Positions 1,493 to 58,669 of a stretch of DNA of 64,000 bases are shown in pieces. Position 1 is the first letter of the stretch. Each line of letters starts with the position of its first letter. The notes below the pieces were generated by a model. It was not told where the DNA came from and did not search any database. It was given only the letters and a program-made list of their open reading frames with translations. The stretch lies in the IMG/VR virus record IMGVR_UViG_3300050821_013430, positions 310,001-374,000 of that record, one strand, 5' to 3'. Position numbers and translations under genes: made by a program.

Positions 1493-1765
1493 TTACGCAT
1501 TGAACACCAATCCATCGTGGGTATGGATACTGACTACCTGATCATTTGAGTTCAGATACACCAAGTCTCCGGTGTTGTACTTGATGGATGTACGACCAAT
1601 ACCGATGATGGCGGTCTCCTCAGCACCATTGGCATAATGCTTGATGACCAGATCGCTCTCCTTCAACTCATCTTCCTGGTGTCCCTTATGCCACTCACGG
1701 CACTTGGGGACATCGCATTCCAGGAATCCGTCAGCGTGCCAAGTCCAATGAACCGTTGAAACCAT
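1493..1765 (-). CDS. Hypothetical protein (MVSTVHWTW...)
   Basis: AAGGA SD before ATG at 1765. Confidence 0.5.
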   Translation of the reverse strand: MVSTVHWTWHADGFLECDVPKCREWHKGHQEDELKESDLVIKHYANGAEETAIIGIGRTSIKYNTGDLVYLNSNDQVVSIHTHDGLVFNA

Positions 1766-1783
1766 CGTTATTCCTTTGCTTAT

Positions 1784-3065
1784 CACGTCGCAACTTCGCG
1801 ATTTCATTTGGTAATCAGGGCATAATGGTGCATCCACTTAGACCCATGATGACCTTCAAGTACAAACTCTACAAGAGCCATAAGTTTGGCTACTTAGAGG
1901 CACTTTTGCCCATCGCCTGCGATATCTACAACTGGGTGCTTTTGACCAAACGGGAAGCATATTCATGGGATAAGACCAACATCAGCCTTTATGAGATGCA
2001 GAAAATGGTCAAGGACAGGCGGAACGAGTCTAATTCGGCGTGGAAGATGATCGGCTCGCAAGCCGTAGAGCAAATCATCGATCGTATCTACAATGGCTAT
2101 GAGCGTTTCTTTGGCGATCTGAAACGGGGCGTGAAAACTTCTCCTCCTAAGCTCAAAAAGACACCTAAGTATCGGAGCATCACATTTAGACAGGGCAGGG
2201 GCTACAAACTACTCGATAACAACATCATCTACATCAGCGGACAAGGCTGGAAAGGACGAGGAGGCAAAACATTCAGGTTTCACAAACACCGAGATTGGCG
2301 GGGCCAGATCAAAACCCTTACCATCAAGAAAAACAACTTAGGCGAATGGTTCATCTACATCACAACGGACTATGAGGGAAAACTTCCAGAGCCAACCAGA
2401 ACGGGTAAAAGCGTCGGTTTGGACTTCGGGCTCAAAACATTCCTCACCACATCCGATGGTCAGATGATTCAATCTCCTCAGTTCTTCAAGCAAGGCCTTC
2501 GAGAGATCAAGAGACTGTCAAAACTGTTGAACTCGAAGAAGAAAGGCAGCAACAACTGGGAGCGGGCGAGACTAAACCTTGCTCGGGCCCACGAGAGCAT
2601 AACCAACAAGCGGAAAGACTTCCACTGGAAACTAGCAGTCAAACTTTGTCAGCAGTATGAGTTCATCTGCTTAGAGATACTCAACCTCAAAGGAATGAAA
2701 GCTTTATGGGGTCGCAAGGTTTCCGATCTGGGCTTTTACCAGTTCGTTCAGATACTCAAATGGGAGGCCCAGAAACACGGATGTAGGGTGATCCAAATTG
2801 ATCGTTGGTATCCTTCGTCGAAAGAGTGCGGTGCTTGTTGGCACATCAATCAAAGCCTTTCGTTGCGAGATCGAGAGTGGAACTGCGTTGCCTGCAACGC
2901 CCATCACGATCGTGATCTCAATGCTGCTCAGAACATACTTAGAGTGGGGTTAGCCACTCTTGCAGGAGCCGATGTCAGACCTCTCAAACCCTTGCGGAAG
3001 CAGGGCAAGAAGGCATTCGGCGTTGATAACACAAGATCGAAGCGACACAAATCGCTTCGGATCAA
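1784..3065 (+). mobile_element. Non-autonomous IS200/IS605-type element (tnpB only)
   Basis: tnpB antisense to the operon; subterminal hairpin then TCAA (3062-3065); TTAT at 1780-1783 as candidate left junction; no tnpA. Confidence 0.55.
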
Positions 3066-3069
3066 CTAA
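1825..3069 (+). CDS. tnpB: TnpB RNA-guided endonuclease
   Basis: RuvC motifs VGLDFGLK, ICLE, HDRDLNAAQNI; CxxC...CxxC Zn finger; start 1825 or 1846. Confidence 0.93.
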   Translation: MVHPLRPMMTFKYKLYKSHKFGYLEALLPIACDIYNWVLLTKREAYSWDKTNISLYEMQKMVKDRRNESNSAWKMIGSQAVEQIIDRIYNGYERFFGDLKRGVKTSPPKLKKTPKYRSITFRQGRGYKLLDNNIIYISGQGWKGRGGKTFRFHKHRDWRGQIKTLTIKKNNLGEWFIYITTDYEGKLPEPTRTGKSVGLDFGLKTFLTTSDGQMIQSPQFFKQGLREIKRLSKLLNSKKKGSNNWERARLNLARAHESITNKRKDFHWKLAVKLCQQYEFICLEILNLKGMKALWGRKVSDLGFYQFVQILKWEAQKHGCRVIQIDRWYPSSKECGACWHINQSLSLRDREWNCVACNAHHDRDLNAAQNILRVGLATLAGADVRPLKPLRKQGKKAFGVDNTRSKRHKSLRIN

Positions 3070-10074: not shown

Positions 10075-10734
10075 CTACTTGGCTAAACCGTTGGGAGTAA
10101 TGGTTTGATGCTTCCAATGTACATCGGTCTGCACATGATCTTTGCGTACCCACTTCTGCACACACTGAGGAAACTCCTCATCGGAGAACTCTCGTTCTAC
10201 ACGGACAACCACACCTTCTCGAATAGTACCCAGAGCAGATGGCTGCTTGGCGAGATTGAGAATAAGGTCTTTCAATGTCTTGGCGGTATCCACCTTACCC
10301 TCAAACAAGACTGGTACAGTAGGCAGTCCAAGTAGGGAACAGAATCGACATACTGCACTCCAACGCAGCCAATTATCGTTGATCCTGATGCCGAACATCA
10401 TGAGGTAGCCGGGGAGTTTGTCGTAGGCTAAGGAATGCTTGGCGTAGGCGTATTCGCCAAACCATTGAGAGTCAGGAGGAATGTCGTGCTTGATGGTAGC
10501 GTGTAGGGCTTTCAACAAGTCGAAAGAAGGATGGATGGGAGGGCCCGAATGAGAACGGGCAAACACTCCGTCATGCTCTAAGCAGACATTGGAGCCATCA
10601 ATCTTCTCCGTAATGACAATGGGAACATTGAGCAATGCTTCTACACTGTCAGCGATCTTGTCGTCGTTGGTGGCACCTTCCGAGAAAGGTAGGTGCATGG
10701 TGCGGGGATACTTAGGGCTGGTCATGACTGACAC
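10075..10734 (-). CDS. ATP-dependent RNA ligase family protein
   Basis: KYPRTMHLPFS, TEKIDGSN (motif I), EGVVVR, KWVR. Confidence 0.85.
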   Translation of the reverse strand: MSVMTSPKYPRTMHLPFSEGATNDDKIADSVEALLNVPIVITEKIDGSNVCLEHDGVFARSHSGPPIHPSFDLLKALHATIKHDIPPDSQWFGEYAYAKHSLAYDKLPGYLMMFGIRINDNWLRWSAVCRFCSLLGLPTVPVLFEGKVDTAKTLKDLILNLAKQPSALGTIREGVVVRVEREFSDEEFPQCVQKWVRKDHVQTDVHWKHQTITPNGLAK

Positions 10735-20986: not shown

Positions 20987-23900
20987 TCAGTTCTCCATTG
21001 TCTTGGGCGTTTCGGTTTCTTCGGACTCGGATACTGTTTCAATCGACTCTTCCGCGCAGACACTTGCGCCTACGGTAGATTCCGCCTTCGGAATCCCCGA
21101 GAGGGATTCGCTAATCACCGGCAGCAACTGCTCCAAAGCCATCTCAATCATCGAGTTGCCGATGACCGAAAGACTCTGCACTCTAAACTCAGTGGCCAGT
21201 CGTTGCGCCTTTTGATGCTCAGAGAGTTTAGGGGCGTAGGTAAAGAGCAGACCCAGAATGGCGCTAACCAAAGCATCGCCAGCCTCCGTCTCCATCAATC
21301 CCTTGATGGATTCGACCATCTGACTGTTCTTGCCCTGTTGTGTTAGCATTCGGACAATCCCGGCCTTGGCCGCTGCATTGATCTGAGTTGCTGCAACTCG
21401 GTATAGAGCCGAGGATGCGTCTTCTTTGATCATGGCACCGAAAGGAGTACGATGGATAGCGACTGCTGCGGCCGTGGCCGCAACGGCTGCCGTTGCTTCT
21501 GGCACAAACTTGGGTTTGGTCTCTATCGGGGCGGTACCAGTAGAGGGACGGAAGCAATTGGCTTCGCTCTCCAATCCAGTGACGAACCAGGTGCGTCCGC
21601 CTTTGGCCTGTTCGACATATGCGGGATCGATGAAACCCGCGCCGCAGTCATTGTGCCATGAATGGCCTCTGGAATCGAGAGGAAGACTCAGCAGATAGCC
21701 AGGAGCGCTAGTGTTAGTCCTGATTCCAATGACGGTGGCTCGTACACTACTGCGAGTTTCGTCTCGCTTTGACTGCGAGTGATAGCAGTAATGCCCATCA
21801 TCCGCGACGAAGAGGTCTACCTTGTCGCCAACCTTGGTGGTCGGGATATACTTCGGCTTCTCTTCCTTCTTGACTTCGACCGGCTTGGGCTTTTCTTCGA
21901 GAGGCGGAGGGGCGTCTGGATGTACTTTCTTGAAGGCATCGGCGATGTTGATATACCAGCATCGAGTGCCTTTTTCCATCACCATCTTCTTGTAGACGAG
22001 ATCGACTTCTTTGAGGCGTCCCTGATAGTCAGATATTGGCCAACCGATGTTCTCCTTAGTCTCGAAGTTGACTAGGATCTGACCTTCACCGACACCGACT
22101 ACGGTTGCTAAAACGGTCTTTGGAACGGCTGCGTCGCTGGCGGTAATCGAACACAGACTTCCGTTGTTGTTTTGGTAGACCTCGATTACATCTCCCACCT
22201 TGACTCCAAGAACGGTCTTGGACTTGCGGAAGAACTCCTCGTCGTTGATCCAGTAAAAGGACTTGCCTTTGGACTTCTCCCGGTATTCGGGAGTGATCCA
22301 CGAAAACTGAGTCCCATAACTATGGCCATATCCCAACGAGGGATCCAGCATCGCCATCGGCTTACCATTCGTATCGAAGCCGCAGATGGTGGCCTTGATA
22401 GGAGACAGGGTGATATCCGGATCGTAACCCAGATCAACCAATCCTCCGGGGGAGCGGCGGAAGATCTCGATCTCATCGCCAACCTTCAATCCGTAGTTGC
22501 CTTCGAGGACATAAGTGACTCCCGTTTTGGCAGGCTCGGCCGGAGTTTCCGCGACAGGTTTCTCTTCCTTGGCTTCGGCCTTTTCAGTCTCCGTCTCGGC
22601 CTTCTCCTCTACTTCTTCATCAGGAGCGCTGGCTTCCGACTGACCCTCCTCGGCCTCAGTCTCTTCCGTTTTGGGCGAAGGGACTTTGGTGCCAAACAGG
22701 AAGCCAACCTTCTTGAAGGCATTTGCCGAAGAGAGTTCCCAGCAGTCCTTATCTTTGACCTCTTCCAAATATCGAGGGTCAATGTTGTACTGCGTACCAC
22801 CCTTAGAATGACCAGAGTTGACACCGGCTGCTTTCTTGTCAAAGACAGCCACCGGATAGCCATGAGTGCTGAAGGCGACGACGGTAGCACGGACGGGCGT
22901 CAATGACTTATCGCCTACCGATCCATCAGCGAGATACTTCTCGGTCTTCCGATCAATCGCGATCACATCTCCGATTCTGACCCCAAGAGAGGTTCTCTCG
23001 AAGGCTTTCTCTGAGTAGATGAATTGGAAGAACTTCTCATCATAGTCATCGACATCCAGACCGAAATCATTGGGGCTATGACGACAGTAATGGTCGTCGC
23101 TATCATAGGCTACGACTGGGCGTCCAGCCGAGAAGGCAACCACCTTGGCAGGAAGGGCCTCCTGATTGAGATCAGGCTCCTCGAACATATCGATGACTTT
23201 ACCGTCCGAGTCCTTGCGAAGATAGACCTTATCTCCGACTTTGAGACCCAAGGTCTTGTCCGTCTCACCGAGCGTAAACACACTATTGGCGGTCAGTCTA
23301 TGAATCGCAGCGTTTCGCTTCTGCGCTTCCCTGGCGTACTTGGGATCGATCTCGAAGTCGAGATACTCCTGATTGGTGTTTTGGAAGTCTTTGGAATCCA
23401 GCATGGCAAGCGGATTGCCATCGAAGAATCCAACGATGGTGGCCACTTCCGAGCCCACGGCGTCTTTCGCCAGGCTGGTTTCGTCAAAGCATTCGCCATC
23501 CTTATTGACCTTGATCTCGACCCGATCTCCGATCTTGAGTCCGAAAGAGTCCAACTGCGGCTTCTCGACCACTACGAAGTCAGCCCGATCAAACAGAGGC
23601 CAGAAGGACTTGTCCTTGAACTCTCCCTTGACCCTCTCCTCTATGCCGAGGTCTTCCATCGAGTCTTCGAGACCATCGTTGATGCTGGAATCGAAGGCGA
23701 CAAGGGGTCGATCCTCACTATCGAATCCAGCAACTACAGCCGGGATCCTCTCGGACTCCTTGTCCGCAGTGTAATCCTCGTTGATCAGATCTCCGTCCTC
23801 ATCGCGGTACATCTCGATCTTGTCGCCGATCTTGAGACCGAGCCTGATAGAGGGTTGACCCAAACGTCTGCAAAGACGCTTGTCAGTTTCGGGGCCGAAG

Positions 23901-24646
23901 CAAGACTTGCTATCCAACTCCCAGAGGGGGCCGTATTCCGATTCCTCGATATACTCCTCATCAATTTCGTAGTCTTCGCCGTGGTTGCCGTTGCCATCGT
24001 TGTTTTCCGCATCATCCAACAGAACGACCGGCTTGCCTTCCTTAGTGAAAGCGACAACAGTGGCAGTTTCGGTCTCGTACTCTTCGTCCCGCTCTTGATC
24101 ATCTTGGCAGAGATCACCGTCCTCATTGCGGAAGACTTCGACTCGATCTCCGATCTTGAGACCAAAGGTTTTCTCGGGGCTGTACTTGGGACTCACCTCG
24201 AAAGCATCCTTATGAATAAGGCCCCAGAAGGACTTGCCTTCGGTCTCGCCTTGGTACTGTTGGGCGACGTTGAGACCTGCTGGTGTTCTTGACAAACTGA
24301 GACTGCTGAAATCGAGATCCAACATGGTCAATACGGCGGGACCACTGAATCCAACGACAGTAGCGGTTGCGGGGGCGAAGGCCTCCTTGTTAGCCGGAGC
24401 GCCGTTGTCGCAAAGCAGATCCGTTCGATGTCGCCAGATCTTGACCCGATCTCCGACCTTGACTCCCAGTTTGGGAGAGGCATAGGACATGGCATCTTCG
24501 AGAGTCTCATAGCCGTTTCCGTCAGTAGACCCATCACATGCTTCGCAGATATTGAAGTAGCGTTCGCGGGCGGAGGAGCCATACTTGCCCCAATCCTTGC
24601 ACGGGGCTCCGCAAGCGCAACAGTTGGTCATAGGTTTAGTGGCCAT
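20987..24646 (-). CDS. 1219-aa protein: N-terminal Zn finger, 9 SH3-like repeats, helical C-domain
   Basis: Nine (G)(L/V)(K/R)(V/I)GD(R/K/V/E)(V/I) starts about 95 aa apart with AT(V/I)VG(F) and FW motifs. Confidence 0.85.
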   Translation of the reverse strand: MATKPMTNCCACGAPCKDWGKYGSSARERYFNICEACDGSTDGNGYETLEDAMSYASPKLGVKVGDRVKIWRHRTDLLCDNGAPANKEAFAPATATVVGFSGPAVLTMLDLDFSSLSLSRTPAGLNVAQQYQGETEGKSFWGLIHKDAFEVSPKYSPEKTFGLKIGDRVEVFRNEDGDLCQDDQERDEEYETETATVVAFTKEGKPVVLLDDAENNDGNGNHGEDYEIDEEYIEESEYGPLWELDSKSCFGPETDKRLCRRLGQPSIRLGLKIGDKIEMYRDEDGDLINEDYTADKESERIPAVVAGFDSEDRPLVAFDSSINDGLEDSMEDLGIEERVKGEFKDKSFWPLFDRADFVVVEKPQLDSFGLKIGDRVEIKVNKDGECFDETSLAKDAVGSEVATIVGFFDGNPLAMLDSKDFQNTNQEYLDFEIDPKYAREAQKRNAAIHRLTANSVFTLGETDKTLGLKVGDKVYLRKDSDGKVIDMFEEPDLNQEALPAKVVAFSAGRPVVAYDSDDHYCRHSPNDFGLDVDDYDEKFFQFIYSEKAFERTSLGVRIGDVIAIDRKTEKYLADGSVGDKSLTPVRATVVAFSTHGYPVAVFDKKAAGVNSGHSKGGTQYNIDPRYLEEVKDKDCWELSSANAFKKVGFLFGTKVPSPKTEETEAEEGQSEASAPDEEVEEKAETETEKAEAKEEKPVAETPAEPAKTGVTYVLEGNYGLKVGDEIEIFRRSPGGLVDLGYDPDITLSPIKATICGFDTNGKPMAMLDPSLGYGHSYGTQFSWITPEYREKSKGKSFYWINDEEFFRKSKTVLGVKVGDVIEVYQNNNGSLCSITASDAAVPKTVLATVVGVGEGQILVNFETKENIGWPISDYQGRLKEVDLVYKKMVMEKGTRCWYINIADAFKKVHPDAPPPLEEKPKPVEVKKEEKPKYIPTTKVGDKVDLFVADDGHYCYHSQSKRDETRSSVRATVIGIRTNTSAPGYLLSLPLDSRGHSWHNDCGAGFIDPAYVEQAKGGRTWFVTGLESEANCFRPSTGTAPIETKPKFVPEATAAVAATAAAVAIHRTPFGAMIKEDASSALYRVAATQINAAAKAGIVRMLTQQGKNSQMVESIKGLMETEAGDALVSAILGLLFTYAPKLSEHQKAQRLATEFRVQSLSVIGNSMIEMALEQLLPVISESLSGIPKAESTVGASVCAEESIETVSESEETETPKTMEN

Positions 24647-26497: not shown

Positions 26498-27256
26498 ATG
26501 GACGAGAACTTTATCACTGAACGTATCTTACCGAACATCAAGATCACGCCAACTGGTTGTTGGATATGGCAACTATCCACTACCAATGGTGGATATGGCC
26601 AAATTTCCTTTCGAAGGAAACCACAAGCAGTACATCGTGTAGTGTATTTGATGACGCACGGCGTCATACCAGAAGGACTGTATGTTTGCCATCTATGCGA
26701 CGAGAAACTCTGCTGTAATCCGGAACATCTTGATGCTCTCACCCCAAAAGAGAACACTATGGACTGCGCTCGGAAAGGTCGTCTCAACCATGCCACGTAT
26801 CAGCATGGACACGAAAAGTGCACTCCTGAAAACTTCTGGGAGAGAACGACCAAACGAAAAACGGGGTGTTGGGAATGGAATCGTTCAACCGACCATAAGG
26901 GATACGGTCAAGTGAAATTCGATGGTAAAACCAGAAGAGCCCATCGAGTGGCTTATACGCTGATCCACGGTAGCATCCCAGAAGGAATGCTTATATGTCA
27001 TGCGTGCGACAACAAACTTTGCTGCAACCCAGCACATTTGTTCCCTGGAACGGCATCAGACAATGCAAGAGACTTGGTGAAAAAGGGACTACACAAACGT
27101 GTAGCGGCCAAACTTACCGACAGACAAGCGGTACGGATTAGAGAGTTGTACTCCGATGAGTCGTACACCTATCAAGAGTTATCTGATGAGTTCAATATGT
27201 CGCTAACTGCCATTGGCAACATCATCCGCGGTACAAGCTTCAAGCACTTACTATAA
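26498..27256 (+). CDS. Homing endonuclease with two HNH domains
   Basis: Twice CWxW...GYG...HRV.Y...G.IPEG..(V/I)CH.CD.K.CCNP.HL; HTH tail. Confidence 0.9.
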   Translation: MDENFITERILPNIKITPTGCWIWQLSTTNGGYGQISFRRKPQAVHRVVYLMTHGVIPEGLYVCHLCDEKLCCNPEHLDALTPKENTMDCARKGRLNHATYQHGHEKCTPENFWERTTKRKTGCWEWNRSTDHKGYGQVKFDGKTRRAHRVAYTLIHGSIPEGMLICHACDNKLCCNPAHLFPGTASDNARDLVKKGLHKRVAAKLTDRQAVRIRELYSDESYTYQELSDEFNMSLTAIGNIIRGTSFKHLL

Positions 27257-35356: not shown

Positions 35357-35856
35357 TGAGTGATGCTCCTTGTCTGATTGATGGCTGACTTCTTGGTAGC
35401 GCCGGTGGGCCACGATCCCACAAGAGCATTACTGCCCAGCAGTTTTTGAGACTGCCCTGTATTCCAATTCCAGCACGGCGCCATACGCTTCTACTTTCTA
35501 CCGTGTAGTCTCTCCAACGCTTCATGCACCATTCCAATCAACATCCAAACTGGTGCCAGAATGAAAAGGAGTGGCCATGCCAGAGTGGTAAACCCACCTC
35601 GCCAAGTCCAAGACTTGGTTAGCCAATCAAAGGCCAGTATCACTACCGTCCCTGTGATGTACGCTATCAGTATGTATCCCAGCATCATCTCACCAACTTC
35701 CCTTCGTCTCCACCAGATGGTCTCTTACCACCCCATCCTCACACTTCACCAACAACACCAATCCACCAGTCTTCAACGTCCATCCATGACAGATGGAAGA
35801 GATAGGCTCCTTGGCGGGGTCTTTGTTCTTGGCGACTTCGGCCTTGACTTCGCTCA

Positions 35857-46974: not shown

Positions 46975-47747
46975 TGCCGTTCCTTCTCCTCCAACTTGCC
47001 CCATTGCTCGTAGAAGTCTGCTGATAGATCGAGTTTGGTTGCCTTCGTCTTCATCATCTGATCAATGGCGTAAGCATACTCATTGATGAACCATTGCCGT
47101 TCGAAGGAGCGACCAGACTTGATCGCGAACTTGGACGTCTCCTTGCGGGACTTCCTTATCTCCCACTCCCCCATCATCCAATGACAAGCGTCTCGAATGA
47201 TCTCGCCGAGTCTGCATGCTGGCCCTACGAACACTTGACGCCACGCTTCCGATAGAGACCTGCGTTGCTTGCTCCATAGTCCCGAGAAGTCCCGATAGTC
47301 TATCGACCAGGTGTTAGAGTGAGGCAGGCGATACGAGACCAGAGGGGCTCCGAGTTTCACCATCGCTTGCTTCCACGCATCTCCATGTCCGTGCTCATGA
47401 GAGAGAAGATGGGCTACCTCATGCCGCATCAAACGCTCATCCCATATCTGCTCCAAGTGAGGGAAACAGATCACTCCGGATTCAGAATGAGCGTGGGCCA
47501 TATGCTCATCGTACTTCCACGCGGTCTCCACATCGTAGTAGCAACTGCCGATATGAATCACCTTCAACTCATCGAAGGCTTGCAGGTATCGAGGCCACTG
47601 CTCTCTTGATAGAGGGTATCGGTAAACGACTATCTTCGTTCGCAGAGGGTCGGGACTAATGGACAGCGTATACCATCCCCACCAAAGCAGGAACCACGCT
47701 GCGAGAAAGGCAGCAGATTGGACGATGATGCGGAGTTCGTAGGTCAT
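46971..47747 (-). CDS. SprT-like zinc metalloprotease with N-terminal TM
   Basis: LMRHEVAHLL...HGHGDAWKQAMVKLGA. Confidence 0.65.
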   Translation of the reverse strand: MTYELRIIVQSAAFLAAWFLLWWGWYTLSISPDPLRTKIVVYRYPLSREQWPRYLQAFDELKVIHIGSCYYDVETAWKYDEHMAHAHSESGVICFPHLEQIWDERLMRHEVAHLLSHEHGHGDAWKQAMVKLGAPLVSYRLPHSNTWSIDYRDFSGLWSKQRRSLSEAWRQVFVGPACRLGEIIRDACHWMMGEWEIRKSRKETSKFAIKSGRSFERQWFINEYAYAIDQMMKTKATKLDLSADFYEQWGKLEEKERQ

Positions 47748-48041
47748 AGGTACCTGACCTCAGTTGTCCTTCTTGGGAGTGTAGAGATCAGGAAAAGCGT
47801 TCGGCGTAGACACCATCGATCGGTAAAGCGGAAAGTGCTGTACCAGTTTGACGTCCCCATCTCGCTTCTCTTGCACCTTGGCCTTGGCTCCTTCGAGGCA
47901 GAGACCGAGACACTTGGCTACGCGTTCATCAGGCGTCATTGGAACTTCTCTTTCAGCCACATCGCCAGTAGCGTGCATCGTACCCGAAGCCACACCTTGA
48001 ACAGACTCCAACGAGACCAATGCTTGGTCAGCTCAGACCAC

Positions 48042-48299
48042 TTACGATGGCCCATGAATCCCTCCGCACTGCGGACACAATAGCGACTCGATTCGTTTGG
48101 CTGGTGGAGAGCCACGGCCCTGCCACGCAAACCCCTGTCTCTTGGAATATCCGTCATCATCGTAGTCCTGTACGTCTTTGATCAGATGGCCATGCTTGAC
48201 ATAACAAGCACGACACCAGATGATGTCTTCGTCATTGGCATGACAAGTGGCCAACGAATTGGTGATGACTGCTTGGCAGAGATTGCAGGATGCGCTCAT
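48042..48299 (-). CDS. CxQCxxxH-tail protein, family B
   Basis: CNLCQAVI...WCRAC...YDDDG...CPQCGGIHGPS*. Confidence 0.75.
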   Translation of the reverse strand: MSASCNLCQAVITNSLATCHANDEDIIWCRACYVKHGHLIKDVQDYDDDGYSKRQGFAWQGRGSPPAKRIESLLCPQCGGIHGPS

Positions 48300-48544
48300 A
48301 GGTGCAGCCTTCCACATTGGGAACAGCACAATGGCTGAATACTCCACCAAGTCGTTGCATTGCGACTCCACCAAGCAAACCCGTGTCTGCTGGAAAAGCC
48401 ATCGTCATCATAGGTCAGGAAGTCCTTGATCAGATGGTAGCGCTCCACGAAACAGGTACGGCACCAATTGACGATGTTGGAATGATCGAAAGCCAATGGC
48501 CCAATGATGGTGGCTTGGCAGATCTGACAAGTAGCAACACTCAT
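48296..48544 (-). CDS. CxQCxxxH-tail protein, family B
   Basis: CQICQATI...WCRTC...YDDDG...CSQCGRLHL*; tandem paralog. Confidence 0.75.
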   Translation of the reverse strand: MSVATCQICQATIIGPLAFDHSNIVNWCRTCFVERYHLIKDFLTYDDDGFSSRHGFAWWSRNATTWWSIQPLCCSQCGRLHL

Positions 48545-48801
48545 AGATGAATCCTTCCACATTGAGGACAAACCTCAGGGTCTTGATCGAAGAAGTTGCC
48601 TGGACTTTTGTTCGGCAGCAACTCTCTCACTCGTGCGTCCAAACATCCGAGCACGCCCGCCACTTCTTTGGCCTGATGCCAGGTCAGCGGCTCAGGATTC
48701 TTAGGGTCTTGCAAGCCGTTATGAAAGGGGAAACGACGGTTAGTCCAACGATAACTGCCATCATAGTTCTTGACCCAAACTCCAAACACTCGTGTACTCA
48801 T
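48541..48801 (-). CDS. CxQCxxxH-tail protein (family C, FxVW..RWT)
   Basis: VFGVW...RWT...RELLP..SPGNFFDQDPEVCPQCGRIHL*. Confidence 0.8.
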   Translation of the reverse strand: MSTRVFGVWVKNYDGSYRWTNRRFPFHNGLQDPKNPEPLTWHQAKEVAGVLGCLDARVRELLPNKSPGNFFDQDPEVCPQCGRIHL

Positions 48802-48832
48802 AGATGCACCTTTCTGGCACTAACGAAGTTGA

Positions 48833-48946
48833 TGCGGCTCTTTGATTGGGAGCCGCAAGACCAATCTTCCCTGGCCGGAGAAGAGGGTGCATCGAGATAC
48901 CGGAGCGACCGGCGCGAGCCTAACACGTAGCAACATCCCAATCAAA
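48833..48946 (-). ncRNA. Stem-closed structured element upstream of family C gene
   Basis: tttgattggga/tcccaatcaaa 11 bp; competing tgcggctc/gagccgca hairpin. Confidence 0.45.
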
Positions 48947-49398
48947 CCGGCAAAGAGTGTTGGCTTCTGCCAGCCCGCAATTGGAACGCTTCTCTCGATG
49001 ACGACAGGTTGTCCGGCTATTCACGTACCGGACTGAAAGGCTACTCGACCCAGAGCGGTTAGTCGTTCGCCTCAACGGATGGACTGCGTGTCTATCGGAC
49101 GCCATGCTTGACCTAAGAGCATGGGAGGACTTGGGAAAATTGGCGAGGAAGCAAGAGCCCTAATATCCATGTTTGAGAAGGAAGGACTCTTTGGCTCGCC
49201 TAACATTGACGGTGGGGAAGCAGAGACCGTAGGTTCATTATCTTCGTGCCCATAAGAGACCGTTCCTTTCTGAGTGAATTGAAGAGGCTTCCGGCCAACT
49301 TGTCGATTGCCCACCAGCCATCCAATCCCCATCACAGAGATTGGCGTGCCGGGCCCAAGGCCCGGTGCTAATGGATCGGTTTACCGGCGAAGCCTCAG

Positions 49399-49481
49399 TT
49401 GGAGATGATGGAATCGAACCATGCGACCTCCCTCTTTCGCATTGCTGCGACGAGGGTGCTCTGCCACTGAGCTAATCTCCA
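49399..49481 (-). tRNA. tRNA-like RNA with anticodon loop replaced by a GCAA-capped hairpin; no encoded CCA
   Basis: Acceptor TGGAGAT/ATCTCCA, D-arm GCTC-AGTGGCA-GAGC, AC stem CCCTC/GAGGG, variable AGGTC, T-loop TTCGATT. Confidence 0.8.
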
Positions 49482-49688
49482 AAGCGCCCCGTGTGCTCAT
49501 TGAGCATGATTGTCTCTCCTAAACCCACGGGGCCACGGGTCAAGAGGTTAGTCGAGGTTAGAGTGGCGACGCTCGACCTTCGTTCTTTCAGCCACCATAG
49601 CAACCGGCATTCTGCCGATGATAGCACCCATCTACTTATGGCCAAGGCCTCGCCAGCGGCTTTCATGGGTGCGGCGTCTTGTAGTCTC

Positions 49689-49889
49689 TCAATGGTACCT
49701 GCTGCATTGAGGACAACGATCTACATCCTTGCGGGCGGTTCTCCCCGAATCGATGAAGGATGTTCCTTCCATGAACCTGTTCTTGAATCGTGGCCCGTTA
49801 TTCGCATCTTGTGGACACCACCCACTCCTGCAAGAGTGTTCTCCTCTTCGGAAACTGCACAGATTGCAAACGGCATCGCGAGTGTTCAA
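49689..49889 (-). CDS. CxQCxxxH-tail protein (CxxC..GxH subgroup)
   Basis: TTG start; CNLC..RGEH...CPQCSRYH*. Confidence 0.7.
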   Translation of the reverse strand: MNTRDAVCNLCSFRRGEHSCRSGWCPQDANNGPRFKNRFMEGTSFIDSGRTARKDVDRCPQCSRYH

Positions 49890-50107
49890 TGATACCTCCC
49901 ACACTGAGGACATCTCGGTACGCCTATGGTAGCCTCAGTCTTACCGGAAGAGACGAAGGCGGTAATGGCATACCCAGATTCGGGGTAAGTGTCTTTGGCA
50001 GACGGGCACACGGTAGTGCCAGCGGTCTTGCTGCCATGAGAGTAGTGCTTGCCGCGAGCGAACAAGCAAACAGAGCAGACGGTATCGTAAGGACTATCGT
50101 CGATCAT
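49886..50107 (-). CDS. CxQCxxxH-tail protein (CxxC..GxH subgroup)
   Basis: CSVC..RGKH...CPQCGRYH*. Confidence 0.75.
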   Translation of the reverse strand: MIDDSPYDTVCSVCLFARGKHYSHGSKTAGTTVCPSAKDTYPESGYAITAFVSSGKTEATIGVPRCPQCGRYH

Positions 50108-50343
50108 GGGTGCAGGTTTCCGCACTGCGGACAGTTTGGATCGGTCTCGAAAAAGCGACCTCGCGATCCATCAGCGAGCACTTCCCTAACTTCACACCTT
50201 GGATGCGGCGTGATCTCCTTCACCCACTTCGCTGCTTCTTGGTAGGTAAGTCGTCTTACACTCCCAGGGCCCTGGCCGTAGTTAGTCCAACGCTCAGGCC
50301 CGTTTGCGGGATAGCACCAGACATTGAAGACGATGCTACTCAT
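50104..50343 (-). CDS. CxQCxxxH-tail protein, family C
   Basis: VFNVW...RWT...REVLADG..G.FF...CPQCGNLHP*. Confidence 0.8.
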   Translation of the reverse strand: MSSIVFNVWCYPANGPERWTNYGQGPGSVRRLTYQEAAKWVKEITPHPRCEVREVLADGSRGRFFETDPNCPQCGNLHP

Positions 50344-50585
50344 GGGTGCAACTCTCCACATTGATGGCAAGTGGGGTTTTGCGTGAAGACGTTGCCTGGG
50401 CTGCCATCCGTAAGGACTTCCCTGATCACCGGATGACGATCATTGCTGATCGAAGCCATAAGTCTCGCTGCCTCAACATAGGTCAGTCGGTTTGGGTTTT
50501 CAGGATCGTTGCCACCAGCGATAGTCCAACGAGAGACTGAGGTATCGTTCTTCTTCGGGGTTTGCAACCAGACATTGAATCGCAT
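50340..50585 (-). CDS. CxQCxxxH-tail protein, family C
   Basis: MRFNVW...RWT...REVLTDGSPG...CHQCGELHP*. Confidence 0.8.
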   Translation of the reverse strand: MRFNVWLQTPKKNDTSVSRWTIAGGNDPENPNRLTYVEAARLMASISNDRHPVIREVLTDGSPGNVFTQNPTCHQCGELHP

Positions 50586-50614
50586 GTGTATCTCCTAAGA
50601 TGGGAAAGGGATTC

Positions 50615-50691
50615 CAGAGAGACCAACGGACTAATTGAGAGCGTGTCGCGGGGGAGCGGAGACACACCCTCATACACCGTCAGTCTCTCTG
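50615..50691 (-). ncRNA. Stem-closed structured element upstream of family C gene
   Basis: cagagagac/gtctctctg closing stem with inner acgg/ccgt and gtgtc/gacac stems. Confidence 0.4.
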
Positions 50692-50846
50692 AAAACTGGG
50701 GTCAGCCTGCATAGGTCGTGAGATCGCTACACGTCTCTTGCAGGTCGATCATATCGGCCTCTCGTTCCGTTGAGCCTATCTCAGTACGGGCCTCGATCAT
50801 CTCCTTGACCCGACGAATGGCATCGGTGATGATCTTGATCTCCTGC

Positions 50847-51104
50847 TCAGTGAGCATCGGTAGAGATCGGCTCGTAAGCGATCGACTCGGCGTTGATGAC
50901 TCCTTCCGGAATCAGTCCTTCGATCTCTTCGAGGTACTTGGCACCCTCTGCCTCGGCGAGAGCCAACAACTCTTCCATGTCCTCTTTCCATTCGGGCATA
51001 CCCTTAGGGAAACGAGCATCGAGGCCTCGCAGGATGGCGATGGCGCTCTTGGCCGCAGTTTCAATCAGGGTCTTGGTCTGTTCGCGTTCAGTCGTTGTAA
51101 GCAT
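50847..51104 (-). CDS. Hypothetical protein
   Basis: AAGGA SD. Confidence 0.5.
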   Translation of the reverse strand: MLTTTEREQTKTLIETAAKSAIAILRGLDARFPKGMPEWKEDMEELLALAEAEGAKYLEEIEGLIPEGVINAESIAYEPISTDAH

Positions 51105-51122
51105 CGTTAGTGTCCTTTCAGG

Positions 51123-51740
51123 TTATGGGTTAGAGGTATTGTCTGCTTCATCGGCCAGGAGTTTGGCCTCGTCGAGGAGAAGGATAACCAGATCGTACAG
51201 ACCGTTGTATCTCTCACCCGAGTTTGCGGGAGTTCGTGCCCTGATTGAATCGCGGGCACGGAGAATGCCGAGTTGTGCCTGCGTTCTCTCTTCGTCGGTG
51301 AGAGTGTCTTGCTCGTCCGGACAGGCACTATCTTGTTGAGAGTATGGAGGCAACATCCCTTCCAAGAGTTTGACCAACTGCTCCATGTATCCCTGGCTCG
51401 ACTCTTCCAGCAACTCGAACCAAGAGAAGATGGCAAGCCTTCGCTGCTCTTCGTTGGAATTGCGGTCGATGATGCTTTTCAGCGTGAAAAGCAAGCCTTC
51501 CCCGACAGCCGCGATGCTCATCTTGGTCATCAGTCTTTCCGACCAAGTAAGTGGAGAACTCTGAGCCTCCACTTGCTGCTCGGCCTCAATCAGGTCGAGC
51601 AACTTTTGGAAGCGCTCGTTGCAATACTGTCCAATCTCGCACAAGGCTTCTTGCCTCTGCTGGGGAGGACGGGACTTGAGACTCGCGTAAAGCGAATCAA
51701 CGCAAGTGTCAATGGTCTTCTTCTCGTGCTCGGTAATCAT
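51123..51740 (-). CDS. Hypothetical helical protein
   Basis: AGGAG SD. Confidence 0.55.
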   Translation of the reverse strand: MITEHEKKTIDTCVDSLYASLKSRPPQQRQEALCEIGQYCNERFQKLLDLIEAEQQVEAQSSPLTWSERLMTKMSIAAVGEGLLFTLKSIIDRNSNEEQRRLAIFSWFELLEESSQGYMEQLVKLLEGMLPPYSQQDSACPDEQDTLTDEERTQAQLGILRARDSIRARTPANSGERYNGLYDLVILLLDEAKLLADEADNTSNP

Positions 51741-51920
51741 GGTAGTCTCCTTATGGCTTCATTACACAGTGGTAGAGATGGGCAGACGGGAGACACCCAT
51801 CCGGCCCCGACATGCAGTCGTAGGTATGAGCCATGGTCTTCCCATTACCATCCGCCCAAAAGCAGACAGCGCTGAGAAGGAGGTAGAAGTAGAGGCCATA
51901 CTTGACCACTTGACGATCGT

Positions 51921-52283
51921 TCATGACGGTTGCTCCTCTGAAACGGTTTCGACTATTGCTGCCGTTGCCTCATCACCCAATACCACGGGCGCTTCGACAA
52001 CCTTCTCCTTGATGCGGAGGTCTTTCATCAACTTGGCGTGGTCTTCGGCATTGGGCATGACAGGGCAACCCATACGAAACCACGCTTTCCTTCTCGTGTG
52101 ATAGTTCGGATGATTGACCGTCTCATCCGGCTTCTTTGGATTGAAGATGGCCAACGGGTTGCTCATGTCGAGGAATCGTTCGGGGGGCAGGGCCCCGGAA
52201 GCGATGGCTCGCTCCGCTTGCATGCGCGTGTACTGACGAGCGGGTTTGACTTTGACGCGGTTCTTCTTCTTGCTTTCGGACAT
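51921..52283 (-). CDS. Hypothetical protein
   Basis: GGAGG SD. Confidence 0.6.
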   Translation of the reverse strand: MSESKKKNRVKVKPARQYTRMQAERAIASGALPPERFLDMSNPLAIFNPKKPDETVNHPNYHTRRKAWFRMGCPVMPNAEDHAKLMKDLRIKEKVVEAPVVLGDEATAAIVETVSEEQPS

Positions 52284-55161: not shown

Positions 55162-56202
55162 ATGAGAAAACGAAGCGTGGAAGAACGATTCTGGGAAAAG
55201 GTGCTGAAAACTGAGGAGGGGTGCTGGCTATGGACTGCCGGTAAGTTTCCGTCAGGGTATGGGGCCTTCGCCATATCACACCGAAAAACGGTGAAAGCGT
55301 CCCGTTATTCCTACGAACTACATCACGGCCCATTCCAAAAAGACCTCTTCGTTCTCCATACTTGCGATCAGCCTTCTTGCGTCAACCCATCCCATTTGTT
55401 CTTGGGTACTCATCAAGACAACATGGATGACCGTACCGCTAAGGACAGGAACCACAAGAATCGTCCTAATCCACCACCGATACTAATCACCCTACCAACT
55501 CGTAGGCCAACTCTCGAAGAGAACTTTTGGAGTATGGTAGAAAAGACAGATGGTTGCTGGGTTTGGAAGGGTCAGGTCAGACATGAAAGTGGAAAGGTAA
55601 GAGGGTGTTTCTACATCGGGAGAGAGGTTGGGGTACTTCCTCAACGGTTCTCATATGAACTACATGCCGGAATTACCGTTGATCCGAACAAGGATCAAAT
55701 CATCCAATCGTGCGGCGAACGACTATGCGTCAATCCAGATCACTTGTCTCTTCGTAAGCGCTACATGGACAAGGACGAAAGGTTTTGGTCTAAGGTGGAT
55801 AAGACAGGAGAGTGTTGGGTATGGACTGGCTACAAGCCAGAAGGCTATGGCCGCTTCTCGTATTGCGAAAACGCAGTAAGAACAAACATACCGGCTCATC
55901 GATATTCTTGGGAACTACACAGCGGCAAAATACCGGAAGGTATGTTCGTTTGTCATCAGTGCGATAATCCACCATGCATCAGACCTGAACACCTTTTCTT
56001 AGGTAGCAACATCGACAACATAGTCGACAGCATCGAGAAGAAGAGGCACAGTTTCGCGAAACTCACTATTGACCAGGTGAAACTAATACGCTCACCTGAA
56101 TTAGCAACTCATAGCAGCCAGGAACTCGCAACCATGTTTGGTGTTTCTTCATACACCATTAGCAAGGTTCTGGATAGAACAACTTGGGCTCATCTACCAT
56201 GA
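55162..56202 (+). CDS. Homing endonuclease with three HNH repeats
   Basis: Three FW.(K/M)V.K...CW.W units; second lacks the conserved His; HTH tail. Confidence 0.9.
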   Translation: MRKRSVEERFWEKVLKTEEGCWLWTAGKFPSGYGAFAISHRKTVKASRYSYELHHGPFQKDLFVLHTCDQPSCVNPSHLFLGTHQDNMDDRTAKDRNHKNRPNPPPILITLPTRRPTLEENFWSMVEKTDGCWVWKGQVRHESGKVRGCFYIGREVGVLPQRFSYELHAGITVDPNKDQIIQSCGERLCVNPDHLSLRKRYMDKDERFWSKVDKTGECWVWTGYKPEGYGRFSYCENAVRTNIPAHRYSWELHSGKIPEGMFVCHQCDNPPCIRPEHLFLGSNIDNIVDSIEKKRHSFAKLTIDQVKLIRSPELATHSSQELATMFGVSSYTISKVLDRTTWAHLP

Positions 56203-57900: not shown

Positions 57901-58669
57901 TCTCCTCTTACACCTCACGAGGCCAAGAAGAAGAACCGAGAGGCAGGAAGACCGAACACGGTCTGAGGATAGCATACTGCAAACACAATGCTACCTTCGC
58001 ACCCTTACCCATCAAGCGCTCATCAGAGCAGTGGGTTCTGCCAGAACTTGTTTAGGCGGACTTTTTGCCCATCTGAATGTATCGGATGAGGAAGGTTGCG
58101 ACCAGAAAGAATCCGGCCAGAAACACTATCATCGGATAGGTTGGCGTGAGATGGAACAACCTAACTATGAGGTAGGAACTCAACGCACCGCCGAAAAAAC
58201 CGGAAGTCGTTTCTTGGAAGGCGGAGAGAAACGCAGTCTTGAATCGAGAAGTGTTCATGTGATGTCCTTTCGTGTCTAAGTGTCCGACGCCTTGGAATTG
58301 AACCAAGCTCGAAGATCCGGGGTTATAAGCCTCGCGGCACTACCTTGTGCCTTGCGTCGGTAAGTCTATCTCTTCATCAACAGCATCGCCCCAAGCACCA
58401 CCGCTGCCAATCCAACCGGCACTACCAGATACCTTACCCACCAACGCGTCCTCGGAAAGACGACATGGTTGAGAACCGGCGCTACAAAGAACATGATCGC
58501 GAACACGACGATGCTTTGCTTATCCATTAGTCCATTCTCCCACGCGTCTTATACAGCCTCACCACACTCTTCCCAATCAGCAGCAACCATGTTGTCGAAC
58601 CGCTGATCCATTCGATCTTCCGAATCCCCAACCACTCGAAACCGAAAGTCTGTATGGTAAGATGTGGGC

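What the first reader, a model, noticed from the sequence alone, without database searches (positions are those of the whole stretch)
49399..49481. tRNA body with the anticodon loop replaced by a GNRA-capped hairpin
Seen in sequence: near-canonical acceptor, D, variable and T arms (the T-stem has one bulge or mismatch). The 7-nt anticodon loop is replaced by 17 nt, G-TCGCA-GCAA-TGCGA-AA. The insert is too short for a self-splicing intron and has no bulge-helix-bulge. The perfect 5-bp stem and stable tetraloop suggest selection rather than decay. Inference: a non-decoding tRNA mimic, for example an uncleavable decoy for anticodon nucleases or a ligand for tRNA-binding defence or stringent-response sensors.
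Basis: partly seen in the sequence, partly recalled or inferred. Interest (0 to 1): 0.72.

Follow-up and report, generated by a model that had tools for sequence, protein, structure and literature searches.

The report
Anticodon-capped tRNA mimic in huge phage
A 473-kb soil phage encodes an RNA that is a well-formed isoleucine-type tRNA except that its anticodon is replaced by a tight capped hairpin, so it probably cannot read codons and may act as a tRNA look-alike; an unrelated huge phage carries the same design.

Summary
Window 49399-49481 (minus strand) is a cloverleaf that passes Rfam's tRNA threshold (39.7 bits). All core tertiary nucleotides are present. A 17-nt G-UCGCA-GCAA-UGCGA-AA segment sits where the 7-nt anticodon loop should be, and the T stem has one bulge. 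The gene is identical in three independent assemblies.

The window lies in a 472,749-bp tailed phage. I found no splicing endonuclease or RtcB in the genome. The insert fits neither the bulge-helix-bulge/loop rule nor the 32:(-3) pair. The only possible spliced anticodons (CGC, CGA) do not fit the body, so splicing is unlikely.

The body is closest to phage tRNA-Ile(GAU) genes, in which GAU occupies the place of the hairpin. A second complete huge phage of 360 kb, with an unrelated terminase, has an Ile-like body with an 18-nt CGA-GGGG-GAAA-CCCC-AGA "loop". That loop has no U33 and cannot give any anticodon loop.

Best reading: a non-decoding, tRNA-Ile-derived mimic kept for its acceptor/elbow half. 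Its function (decoy, competitor or processing signal) is untested. A young pseudogene is the main rival. No orthologue of this exact locus was found.

The parts
49399..49481 (-). Whole tRNA-shaped gene (83 nt; RNA position p = 49482 - coordinate)
   Evidence: RF00005 39.7 bits; cloverleaf MFE, z = -3.2; identical in L209 and L210
49475..49481 (-). Acceptor 5' strand UGGAGAU. It pairs 7/7 with 49400-49406 (AUCUCCA); the discriminator A73 is at 49399; no encoded CCA
   Evidence: Sequence; the same U1-A72/G2-C71/.../U7-A66 + A73 pattern as phage tRNA-Ile(GAU) and the G005 element
49458..49472 (-). D arm (GCUC / AGUGGCA / GAGC) with G18 G19
49452..49456 (-). Anticodon-stem 5' strand CCCUC (pairs with 49430-49434, GAGGG)
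49435..49451 (-). 17-nt segment replacing the 7-nt anticodon loop: G, then UCGCA-GCAA-UGCGA (hairpin 49437-49450, tetraloop 49442-49445), then AA
   Evidence: chance estimate; aligned against UU-GAU-AA of phage tRNA-Ile(GAU)
49407..49424 (-). T arm: G(C)AUGG / UUCGAUU / CCAUC, with the bulged C at 49423
   Evidence: Rfam alignment; the relatives have GCUGG/CCAGC without a bulge
49425..49429 (-). 5-nt variable region AGGUC (class I tRNA)
48802..49688 (-). ORF-poor 887-nt region that holds the gene, between two blocks of small CPQCG-ending paralogues. Soil-metatranscriptome contigs lie at 48868-49113 and 49495-49664. A terminator-like hairpin is at 48865-48884 and a sigma-70-like site at 49618-49645
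   Evidence: the 3' flank folds with z = -3.2. Contigs carry no strand, so the direction is inferred from the terminator

Best explanation
The gene makes a non-decoding, tRNA-Ile-derived RNA. Its acceptor stem, D/T elbow and variable region are those of the tRNA-Ile(GAU) genes common in phages. The anticodon (GAU in those relatives) has been replaced by a segment that zips the loop into a rod: anticodon stem, then a G opposite AA, then five Watson-Crick pairs, then a GCAA cap.

Shown: the structure; its stability; its identity in three assemblies; the absence of intron hallmarks; the absence of a phage-encoded splicing endonuclease or RtcB; and a second occurrence of the same design in an unrelated huge phage.

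Inferred: the RNA is transcribed with the surrounding non-coding region. Its ends are cut by RNase P and RNase Z and it receives CCA like any tRNA, because those enzymes read only the acceptor/T half. It cannot pair with codons and cannot show IleRS the anticodon that enzyme needs. Its flawed T stem (pairs 49-51) may further weaken EF-Tu binding.

It would therefore act through its acceptor/elbow half, as a look-alike that occupies or diverts tRNA-binding proteins without entering translation. Those proteins could be host tRNA-directed defence enzymes or toxins, or phage enzymes. Which partner it binds is unknown.
For: Canonical body with a 17-nt closed loop. A 5-bp stem with a GNRA loop arises in about 1e-4 of random 17-mers.

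Closest GenBank phage matches over the full length are tRNA-Ile(GAU) of Serratia phage Kashira and Pectobacterium phage DU_PP_I. They share the U1-A72...U7-A66 acceptor pattern, A73, the D arm and AGGUCGC. Their UU-GAU-AA loop aligns with the hairpin.

G005 (360,451 bp, terminal repeats, complete; its terminase does not match G000's) has at 113909-113992 an Ile-like body: UGUAGAU/AUUUACA + A73, with 3:70 changed on both sides. It has a different anticodon stem that still pairs and an 18-nt CGA-GGGG-GAAA-CCCC-AGA loop without U33. It also has a T-stem flaw (A51.C63). It lies in a tRNA cluster and shares that cluster's flanking motifs.

No EndA or RtcB in G000, and no EndA in G005.

The non-coding region around the gene is the only part of 47000-52000 present in a soil metatranscriptome.

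Other phage contigs carry conserved tRNA bodies with remodelled anticodon arms. One family keeps its hairpin through changes on both sides of two pairs.
Against: No orthologue of this locus with sequence divergence was found. IMG/VR pattern scans, a metagenome scan with the neighbouring ClpB-like gene, and GenBank phages gave nothing syntenic. Selection on this copy is therefore argued from one analogous element only.

The candidate and the G005 element may be independent derivatives of a common phage tRNA-Ile. Two cases are few.

The tRNA itself is not covered by the RNA contigs, so its transcription, end processing and lack of splicing are not shown.

The phage's other tRNA-like genes are partly odd or weak. 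Two ARAGORN calls have no Rfam support and one is below threshold, which fits a genome that tolerates decaying tRNA genes.

The host is unknown. A bacterial host is inferred only from the phage gene content and from the bacterial-type, long-armed tRNA-Tyr of relative G002.
Confidence: 0.5

Rival explanations
1. A young tRNA-Ile pseudogene. A single complex indel destroyed the anticodon and the gene has not yet decayed. The hairpin is a by-product of the mutation (for example, snap-back or template-switch synthesis makes perfect inverted repeats) and has no function.
For: It is a singleton with no diverged orthologue. The T stem carries a second lesion. There is no encoded CCA, although several other tRNA calls of this genome have one. 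Other tRNA-like genes of G000 are weak or unsupported.
Against: All other stems and tertiary nucleotides are intact. The change is a replacement of GAU by 13 nt rather than a simple duplication or inverted copy of the neighbouring sequence. The hairpin is not a repeat element. The same capped-hairpin design recurs on an Ile-like body in an unrelated phage.
Confidence: 0.25
2. An intron-containing tRNA gene. Ten nucleotides are removed to give a 7-nt loop GU-CGC-AA (cut at 37/38) or GU-CGA-AA, and the product decodes GCG or UCG.
For: 17 = 7 + 10, with U33 and A37/A38 kept. The anticodon pairs with the insert, as in many pre-tRNAs. A giant-virus contig (L251) has a 10-nt insert of the same size at 37/38.
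Against: In L251, positions 32-35 pair with insert positions n-5..n-2 and a 3-nt bulge holds the 3' site. In the candidate, position 32 is G opposite G(-3), the helix is shifted by one, and only two nucleotides are unpaired at the 3' side (sequence). The genome is a tailed phage with bacterial-type gene content and no EndA or RtcB. The body is Ile-type. It lacks G3:U70 (needed for Ala) and a long variable arm (needed for Ser). The analogous G005 element cannot yield any U33 loop.
Confidence: 0.1
3. A processing signal rather than a free-standing mimic. The tRNA shape recruits RNase P and RNase Z to cut a longer non-coding transcript (about 49690 to 48865) into stable flanking RNAs, and the anticodon arm is irrelevant.
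For: Metatranscriptome contigs flank the gene but do not cover it, and one ends at a terminator-like hairpin. The 3' flank is unusually structured. RNase P and RNase Z need only the acceptor/T half (established knowledge).
Against: This would not explain why the loop is closed by a perfect capped helix. It would not explain why the G005 element, which sits in an ordinary tRNA array, has the same feature. Contigs have no strand and coverage is thin.
Confidence: 0.12
4. An assembly or sequencing artefact.
For: None found.
Against: Identical sequence in three independent assemblies from different samples, with 1 difference in 4.8 kb elsewhere. The source DNA run covers it without variants.
Confidence: 0.01

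Closest known systems
Phage tRNA-Ile(GAU) genes (e.g. Serratia phage vB_SmaM-Kashira ON287374 54193-54267; Pectobacterium phage DU_PP_I MF979560 142935-143009)
   Same: U1-A72, G2-C71..., A6-U67, U7-A66 acceptor pattern; A73; identical D arm; AGGUCGC variable/T junction; T loop.
   Different: They have a normal 7-nt UU-GAU-AA loop, an unflawed T stem and an encoded CCA. The candidate has 13 nt in place of GAU, a bulged T stem and no CCA.
Intron-containing pre-tRNAs of archaea, eukaryotes and giant viruses (BHB / bulge-helix-loop motif; example L251, Thr-UGU with a 10-nt insert)
   Same: Enlarged anticodon loop in which the anticodon region pairs with the insert; insert size of 10 nt.
   Different: No 4-bp helix of positions 32-35 with insert n-5..n-2, no 3-nt 3' bulge, no 32:(-3) pair, no endonuclease found, and a tailed phage.
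Phage tRNAs that escape host tRNA nucleases through anticodon-loop or anticodon-stem changes (PMC10264068, PMC11555353, PMC12445682)
   Same: Phage-encoded; the change is concentrated in the anticodon arm, the part that defence nucleases attack.
   Different: Those tRNAs keep a 7-nt loop, are charged and decode. They replace the cleaved host tRNA. The candidate cannot decode.
tRNA-like non-coding RNAs (tmRNA tRNA-like domain, mascRNA, gammaherpesvirus vtRNAs, bacterial YrlA); own knowledge
   Same: Use of the tRNA acceptor/elbow shape for processing or protein binding without decoding.
   Different: None is a full four-arm cloverleaf with a capped, extended anticodon helix. No Rfam family other than tRNA matches.
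Non-proteinogenic tRNA-Gly of staphylococci (cell-wall synthesis); own knowledge
   Same: tRNAs kept out of translation, partly through T-stem pairs that weaken EF-Tu binding. The candidate and the G005 element both have flaws at T-stem pairs 49-51.
   Different: Those tRNAs keep a normal anticodon loop and are charged by GlyRS. Charging of the candidate is unlikely because IleRS needs the anticodon.

Membership tests
Canonical decoding tRNA (Rfam RF00005) | Cloverleaf with conserved tertiary nucleotides | tested here: met
   39.7 bits against a cut-off of 29; U8, A14, G18G19, G15:C48, U54U55C56, A58 read from the sequence
Canonical decoding tRNA (Rfam RF00005) | 7-nt anticodon loop with U33 and a free anticodon | tested here: not met
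   17 nt, of which 10 are paired in a 5-bp hairpin
Canonical decoding tRNA (Rfam RF00005) | Anticodon and identity elements agree | tested here: not met
   The body is Ile(GAU)-type. The possible spliced anticodons are CGC or CGA. There is G3:C70 rather than G3:U70, and a 5-nt variable region
BHB/BHL intron-containing pre-tRNA | 4-bp helix of positions 32-35 with the insert, flanked by 3-nt bulges (or a bulge and a loop) | tested here: not met
   The helix is 33-37 with insert positions 5-9; only G32 and two A are unpaired. The positive example L251 meets the rule
BHB/BHL intron-containing pre-tRNA | Pair between position 32 and insert position -3 | tested here: not met
   G32 lies opposite G(-3) (sequence)
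BHB/BHL intron-containing pre-tRNA | Splicing endonuclease and ligase available | tested here: inconclusive
   No PF01974 or PF01139 in G000, with controls positive. An Rnl2-type RNA ligase domain is present at window 10075-10734. The host genome is unknown
BHB/BHL intron-containing pre-tRNA | Insert removed in the mature RNA | not testable with these tools
   The only RNA run holds contigs beside the gene, not over it
Group I intron in a tRNA anticodon loop | Catalytic core of about 200 nt or more | tested here: not met
   The insert is 10 nt; no Rfam intron match
Nuclease-evading decoding phage tRNAs | Normal loop length with point changes; decodes | tested here: not met
   Loop closed by a hairpin; definition from PMC10264068 and PMC12445682
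tRNA pseudogene | Scattered disabling changes in stems and conserved nucleotides | tested here: inconclusive
   Only two lesions (loop replacement, T-stem bulge); everything else is intact. No diverged orthologues exist to measure constraint
Proposed family: anticodon-capped tRNA-Ile-like RNAs of huge phages | Ile-type U1-A72 acceptor + A73, normal D/T elbow, GNRA-capped hairpin in place of the anticodon, purine-rich joints | tested here: met
   Candidate and G005:113909-113992. Only two members are known. None was found in 36 other large phage records

The most novel reading that the evidence does not exclude
Huge phages of unrelated lineages maintain a dedicated class of anticodon-less tRNA-Ile mimics (U1-A72 acceptor, A73, weakened T stem, GNRA-capped anticodon helix). 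These RNAs are matured like tRNAs but excluded from the ribosome. They serve as a counter-defence or regulatory ligand for a protein that reads the acceptor/elbow of tRNA. They would be one branch of a wider, undescribed practice in phages of remodelling tRNA arms with capped hairpins, as in the variable-arm hairpins of G002 and G005 and the other anticodon-arm families seen in IMG/VR.
Probability: 0.3. Interest if true: 0.8.

Novelty: new variant of a known kind. Interest (0 to 1): 0.6.

Why it matters
Phage tRNAs are now seen as weapons against host enzymes that cut or modify tRNAs. All described cases are working tRNAs that replace damaged host ones. A tRNA whose anticodon is deliberately sealed would be a different tool: a look-alike that binds tRNA-recognising proteins without touching translation.

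If real, it gives a direct handle for finding such proteins by pull-down with the RNA. It would also explain part of the many "odd" tRNA calls in huge-phage genomes that annotation pipelines discard or mislabel as intron-bearing. If it is only a fresh pseudogene, it is ordinary.

Tried and rejected
1. Eukaryotic or giant-virus origin of the window: rejected. No NCLDV capsid or PolB was found. Baseplate_J and a GpA terminase are present.

2. Alternative genetic code to explain the sparse long ORFs: not needed. Standard-code ORFs cover 77% of the GC-rich half against 15% in shuffles.

A second run search found the same single RNA run.

4. Orthologue hunts all gave no diverged copy of this locus:
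- exact and degenerate DNA patterns in IMG/VR;
- the ClpB-like neighbour in IMG/VR and in metagenomes (at most 43% identity, cellular ClpB);
- an exact-protein look-up of neighbours (the same strain only);
- GenBank phages.

5. The relative G002 (53% identical baseplate protein) has 41 tRNAs but no counterpart.

6. Pattern TGNAGATTAGCTCAG in 36 large phage records: only the G005 element is a real tRNA-like hit. The other three matches are chance.

7. A single-sequence covariance model (R1) did not separate capped-hairpin elements from ordinary tRNAs. L470 scored 49 bits, in the midst of normal tRNAs. It was dropped.

8. The hairpin as a repeated or mobile mini-element: rejected.

9. Host inference from TnpB: the nearest relatives are cyanobacteria and Poribacteria at 46% or less, too distant to name a host.

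10. Literature searches found no description of anticodon-capped phage tRNA-likes. This is absence in the held library only.

Full report
WHERE THE WINDOW LIES. The window is bases 310001-374000 of a 472,749-bp IMG/VR virus record from soil, rated complete. It has no NCLDV capsid or family-B polymerase. It encodes a Baseplate_J protein, a GpA-type large terminase, and collagen-repeat and pectate-lyase-like fibre proteins. It is therefore a huge tailed phage.

The genome has two parts. The first 240 kb has 37-43% G+C and long minus-strand genes. The stretch 250-430 kb has 50-56% G+C and is packed with short ORFs lacking family matches. Standard-code ORFs cover 77% of the GC-rich part against 15% in shuffles, so no other genetic code is called for. 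All tRNA-like genes lie in the GC-rich part on the minus strand.

THE OBSERVATION. The reverse complement of 49399-49481 is an 83-nt cloverleaf.
- Acceptor: UGGAGAU/AUCUCCA (7 Watson-Crick pairs), discriminator A, no encoded CCA.
- D arm: GCUC-AGUGGCA-GAGC.
- Anticodon stem: CCCUC/GAGGG.
- Variable region: AGGUC.
- T arm: G(C)AUGG-UUCGAUU-CCAUC, with one bulged C.
- Loop: G-UCGCA-GCAA-UGCGA-AA (17 nt) in place of the usual 7 nt.

Rfam's tRNA model scores it 39.7 bits (cut-off 29) and treats the 17 nt as a local insert. ARAGORN finds it only when introns are allowed. The minimum-free-energy fold is exactly this structure, and no shuffle of 200 folded as well.

A perfect stem of 5 or more pairs occurs in 1.3% of random 17-mers of this composition. 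A 5-bp stem with a GNRA loop occurs in about 1 in 10,000. The gene is identical in two further assemblies from other samples.

IS IT AN INTRON? Removing 10 nt can give only GU-CGC-AA or GU-CGA-AA (enumerated from the sequence; ARAGORN picks CGA). Four lines argue against splicing.

(i) Geometry. In canonical pre-tRNAs, positions 32-35 pair with insert positions n-5 to n-2. The last two insert nucleotides plus nucleotide 38 form a 3-nt bulge, and position 32 pairs with insert position -3. This is established knowledge. I checked it on a giant-virus tRNA-Thr with a 10-nt insert found here (L251). That element fits the rule, and its contig bears a chlorovirus-type minor capsid domain. In the candidate, G32 faces G(-3), the helix is shifted by one register (33-37 with insert 5-9), and only two A's are unpaired 3' of it.

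(ii) Enzymes. Neither tRNA-intron endonuclease nor RtcB is encoded, while the control genomes gave hits. An Rnl2-type ligase domain is encoded 39 kb away, which is not enough on its own.

(iii) Identity. The body lacks G3:U70 (needed for Ala) and a long variable arm (needed for Ser).

(iv) The analogous element in a second phage (below) has no U33 at all.

The host is unknown. The gene content, and the bacterial-type long-armed tRNA-Tyr of the relative G002, point to bacteria. TnpB relatives are too distant to say more.

WHAT THE BODY DERIVES FROM. In GenBank phages, the only full-length matches are a tRNA-Ile(GAU) of Serratia phage Kashira and an unannotated counterpart in Acinetobacter phage ABPH49. 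The 5' half also matches the tRNA-Ile(GAU) of Pectobacterium phage DU_PP_I.

The alignment shows the same unusual acceptor pattern (U1-A72, G2-C71, variable 3:70 and 4:69, G5, A6-U67, U7-A66), A73, the same D arm and the same AGGUCGC junction. Their loop UU-GAU-AA aligns with G-U-[13 nt]-A-A of the candidate. So the anticodon itself was replaced, not merely interrupted. IleRS depends on the anticodon (established knowledge), so charging is unlikely.

A SECOND CASE. A length-only pattern scan of IMG/VR for class-I tRNAs with 8-14 extra nucleotides in the anticodon arm returned mostly false matches to initiator tRNAs. It also returned a few real cases. One of them, L470 (= G005:113909-113992), lies in a complete 360,451-bp phage with terminal repeats and 58 tRNA matches. 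Its terminase is unrelated to that of this phage. Its features are:
- acceptor UGUAGAU/AUUUACA + A73, differing from the candidate by a two-sided change at 3:70 and a G-C to G-U change at 5:68;
- the same D arm and AGGUCG junction;
- a different anticodon stem that still pairs (UCUUG/CGGGA);
- an 18-nt loop CGA-GGGG-GAAA-CCCC-AGA, again a GNRA-capped helix joined through purines, with an unpaired A on the 3' side;
- a T-stem flaw of its own (A51.C63).

It has no U33, so no excision can produce an anticodon loop, and G005 has no EndA. It sits in a tRNA array and shares the array's flanking motifs, so it is presumably matured with its neighbours.

In 36 other large phage records, no further member was found. 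Two unrelated phages thus carry Ile-type bodies with the anticodon sealed by hairpins of unrelated sequence. This is hard to explain by decay and is the main argument for selection on the architecture.

CONTEXT IN THE WINDOW. The gene lies in an ORF-poor 887-nt gap inside a tandem array of small minus-strand paralogues that end in CPQCGxxH. Of the 5 kb laid, only two pieces of this gap occur in a soil metatranscriptome: 48868-49113 and 49495-49664. The first ends at a terminator-like hairpin on the minus strand. The 3' flank is more structured than shuffles (z = -3.2).

This suggests a non-coding transcription unit containing the tRNA-like gene. It leaves open that the tRNA shape also serves as a cutting signal for RNase P and RNase Z. 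The contigs have no strand and do not cover the gene, so expression of the gene itself is not shown.

WIDER PATTERN. Relatives and other phages show that remodelling tRNA arms with capped hairpins is common.
- G002 and G005 carry many class-I isoacceptors with extra GAAA-type variable-arm hairpins. G005 also has arm-less tRNA-likes.
- About 100-kb contigs share a near-invariant tRNA body with a 22-26-nt anticodon "loop" holding a conserved motif.
- A third family has (A/U)AUA plus a 5-bp/GACG hairpin, with two pairs changed on both sides between members.
Rfam knows all of these only as tRNA. The literature held here describes decoding phage tRNAs that evade nucleases, but nothing like these elements.

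VERDICT. The best-supported explanation is a non-decoding tRNA-Ile-derived mimic that works through its acceptor/elbow half (0.5). A fresh pseudogene (0.25) and a pure processing signal (0.12) are the rivals. It is a new variant of known kinds (phage tRNAs, tRNA-like RNAs). Interest is moderate to high because the design recurs, and it is limited by there being only two members and no RNA-level data.

Noticed in passing
whole record G000 (window = 310001-374000): The phage genome has two parts: about 240 kb at 37-43% G+C with long structural genes, and about 190 kb at 50-56% G+C packed with short ORFs without family matches. All tRNA-like genes lie in the GC-rich part, on the minus strand.
   Followed up: partly
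window 48042-48801 and 49689-50585 (minus strand): Tandem array of seven small overlapping paralogous ORFs (74-110 aa) of two alternating subtypes, all ending in a CxxCG(R/N/E)xH zinc-ribbon-like motif. They flank the tRNA-like gene and have no Pfam match.
   Followed up: no
window 48802-49688: Only this ORF-poor stretch of 47000-52000 appears in a soil metatranscriptome (contigs 48868-49113 and 49495-49664). One contig ends at a terminator-like hairpin at 48865-48884(-). The 3' flank folds with z = -3.2. There may be further non-coding RNAs here.
   Followed up: partly
window 58282-58360 (minus strand): ARAGORN's 79-nt 'tRNA-Ile(UAU)' fits Rfam's tRNA-Sec model best (30.5 bits, below cut-off). 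It has a long acceptor, a 4-bp T stem and an 11-nt variable region, like the allo-tRNAs of PMC5389517. G002 has a 93-nt Ile(UAU) with a long variable arm.
   Followed up: partly
window 35394-35482 and G000:275261-275342: Two ARAGORN 'tRNA-Leu(CAA)' calls with mismatched stems get no Rfam tRNA match even at E = 1. They are doubtful or highly divergent.
   Followed up: partly
window 10075-10734 (minus strand): 219-aa Rnl2-type RNA ligase nucleotidyltransferase domain (PF09414, 95 bits). No RtcB or EndA is in the genome.
   Followed up: partly
window 1756-3069 (+), 26498-27256 (+), 55162-56202 (+), 20987-24646 (-): A TnpB (OrfB_IS605 + Cas12f-like TNB) whose nearest cellular relatives are cyanobacterial at 46%. 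Two HNH_3 homing-type endonucleases. A 1219-aa protein with a MazE/AbrB-type match.
   Followed up: no
G002 (L094 record) and G005 (L530-L535): Many normally class-I tRNAs (Lys, Arg, Ile, Thr, Gly, Gln, Asp, Val, Cys, Met, Asn) carry extra GAAA/GNRA-capped variable-arm hairpins, often beside a normal-length copy. G005 also has tRNA-likes of 45-65 nt lacking the anticodon arm. G002 has a CUA suppressor.
   Followed up: partly
L536-L562 (about 100-kb IMG/VR contigs, e.g. L536:2334-2423): At least 18 contigs share a near-invariant tRNA body (G1.U72) with a 22-26-nt anticodon 'loop' that forms an extended arm and holds the conserved motif AAUGAUU..UUAAAGGUAGUU. There is no U33. Rfam calls it only tRNA.
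   Followed up: partly
L235:3575-3660, L248, L250:13707-13790, L265:2720-2803: GC-rich phage contigs with a tRNA body whose loop is (A/U)AUA plus a 5-bp hairpin with a GACG loop, abutting the 3' strand of the anticodon stem. Two hairpin pairs differ on both sides between L250 and L265. In L265 the element lies just 3' of the large terminase gene.
   Followed up: partly
window 47835-49096: Short pieces 100% identical to the window occur in a seawater and a freshwater DNA run of 2025 (X3, X4) at low depth. This could be wide distribution of the phage or carry-over between libraries.
   Followed up: no
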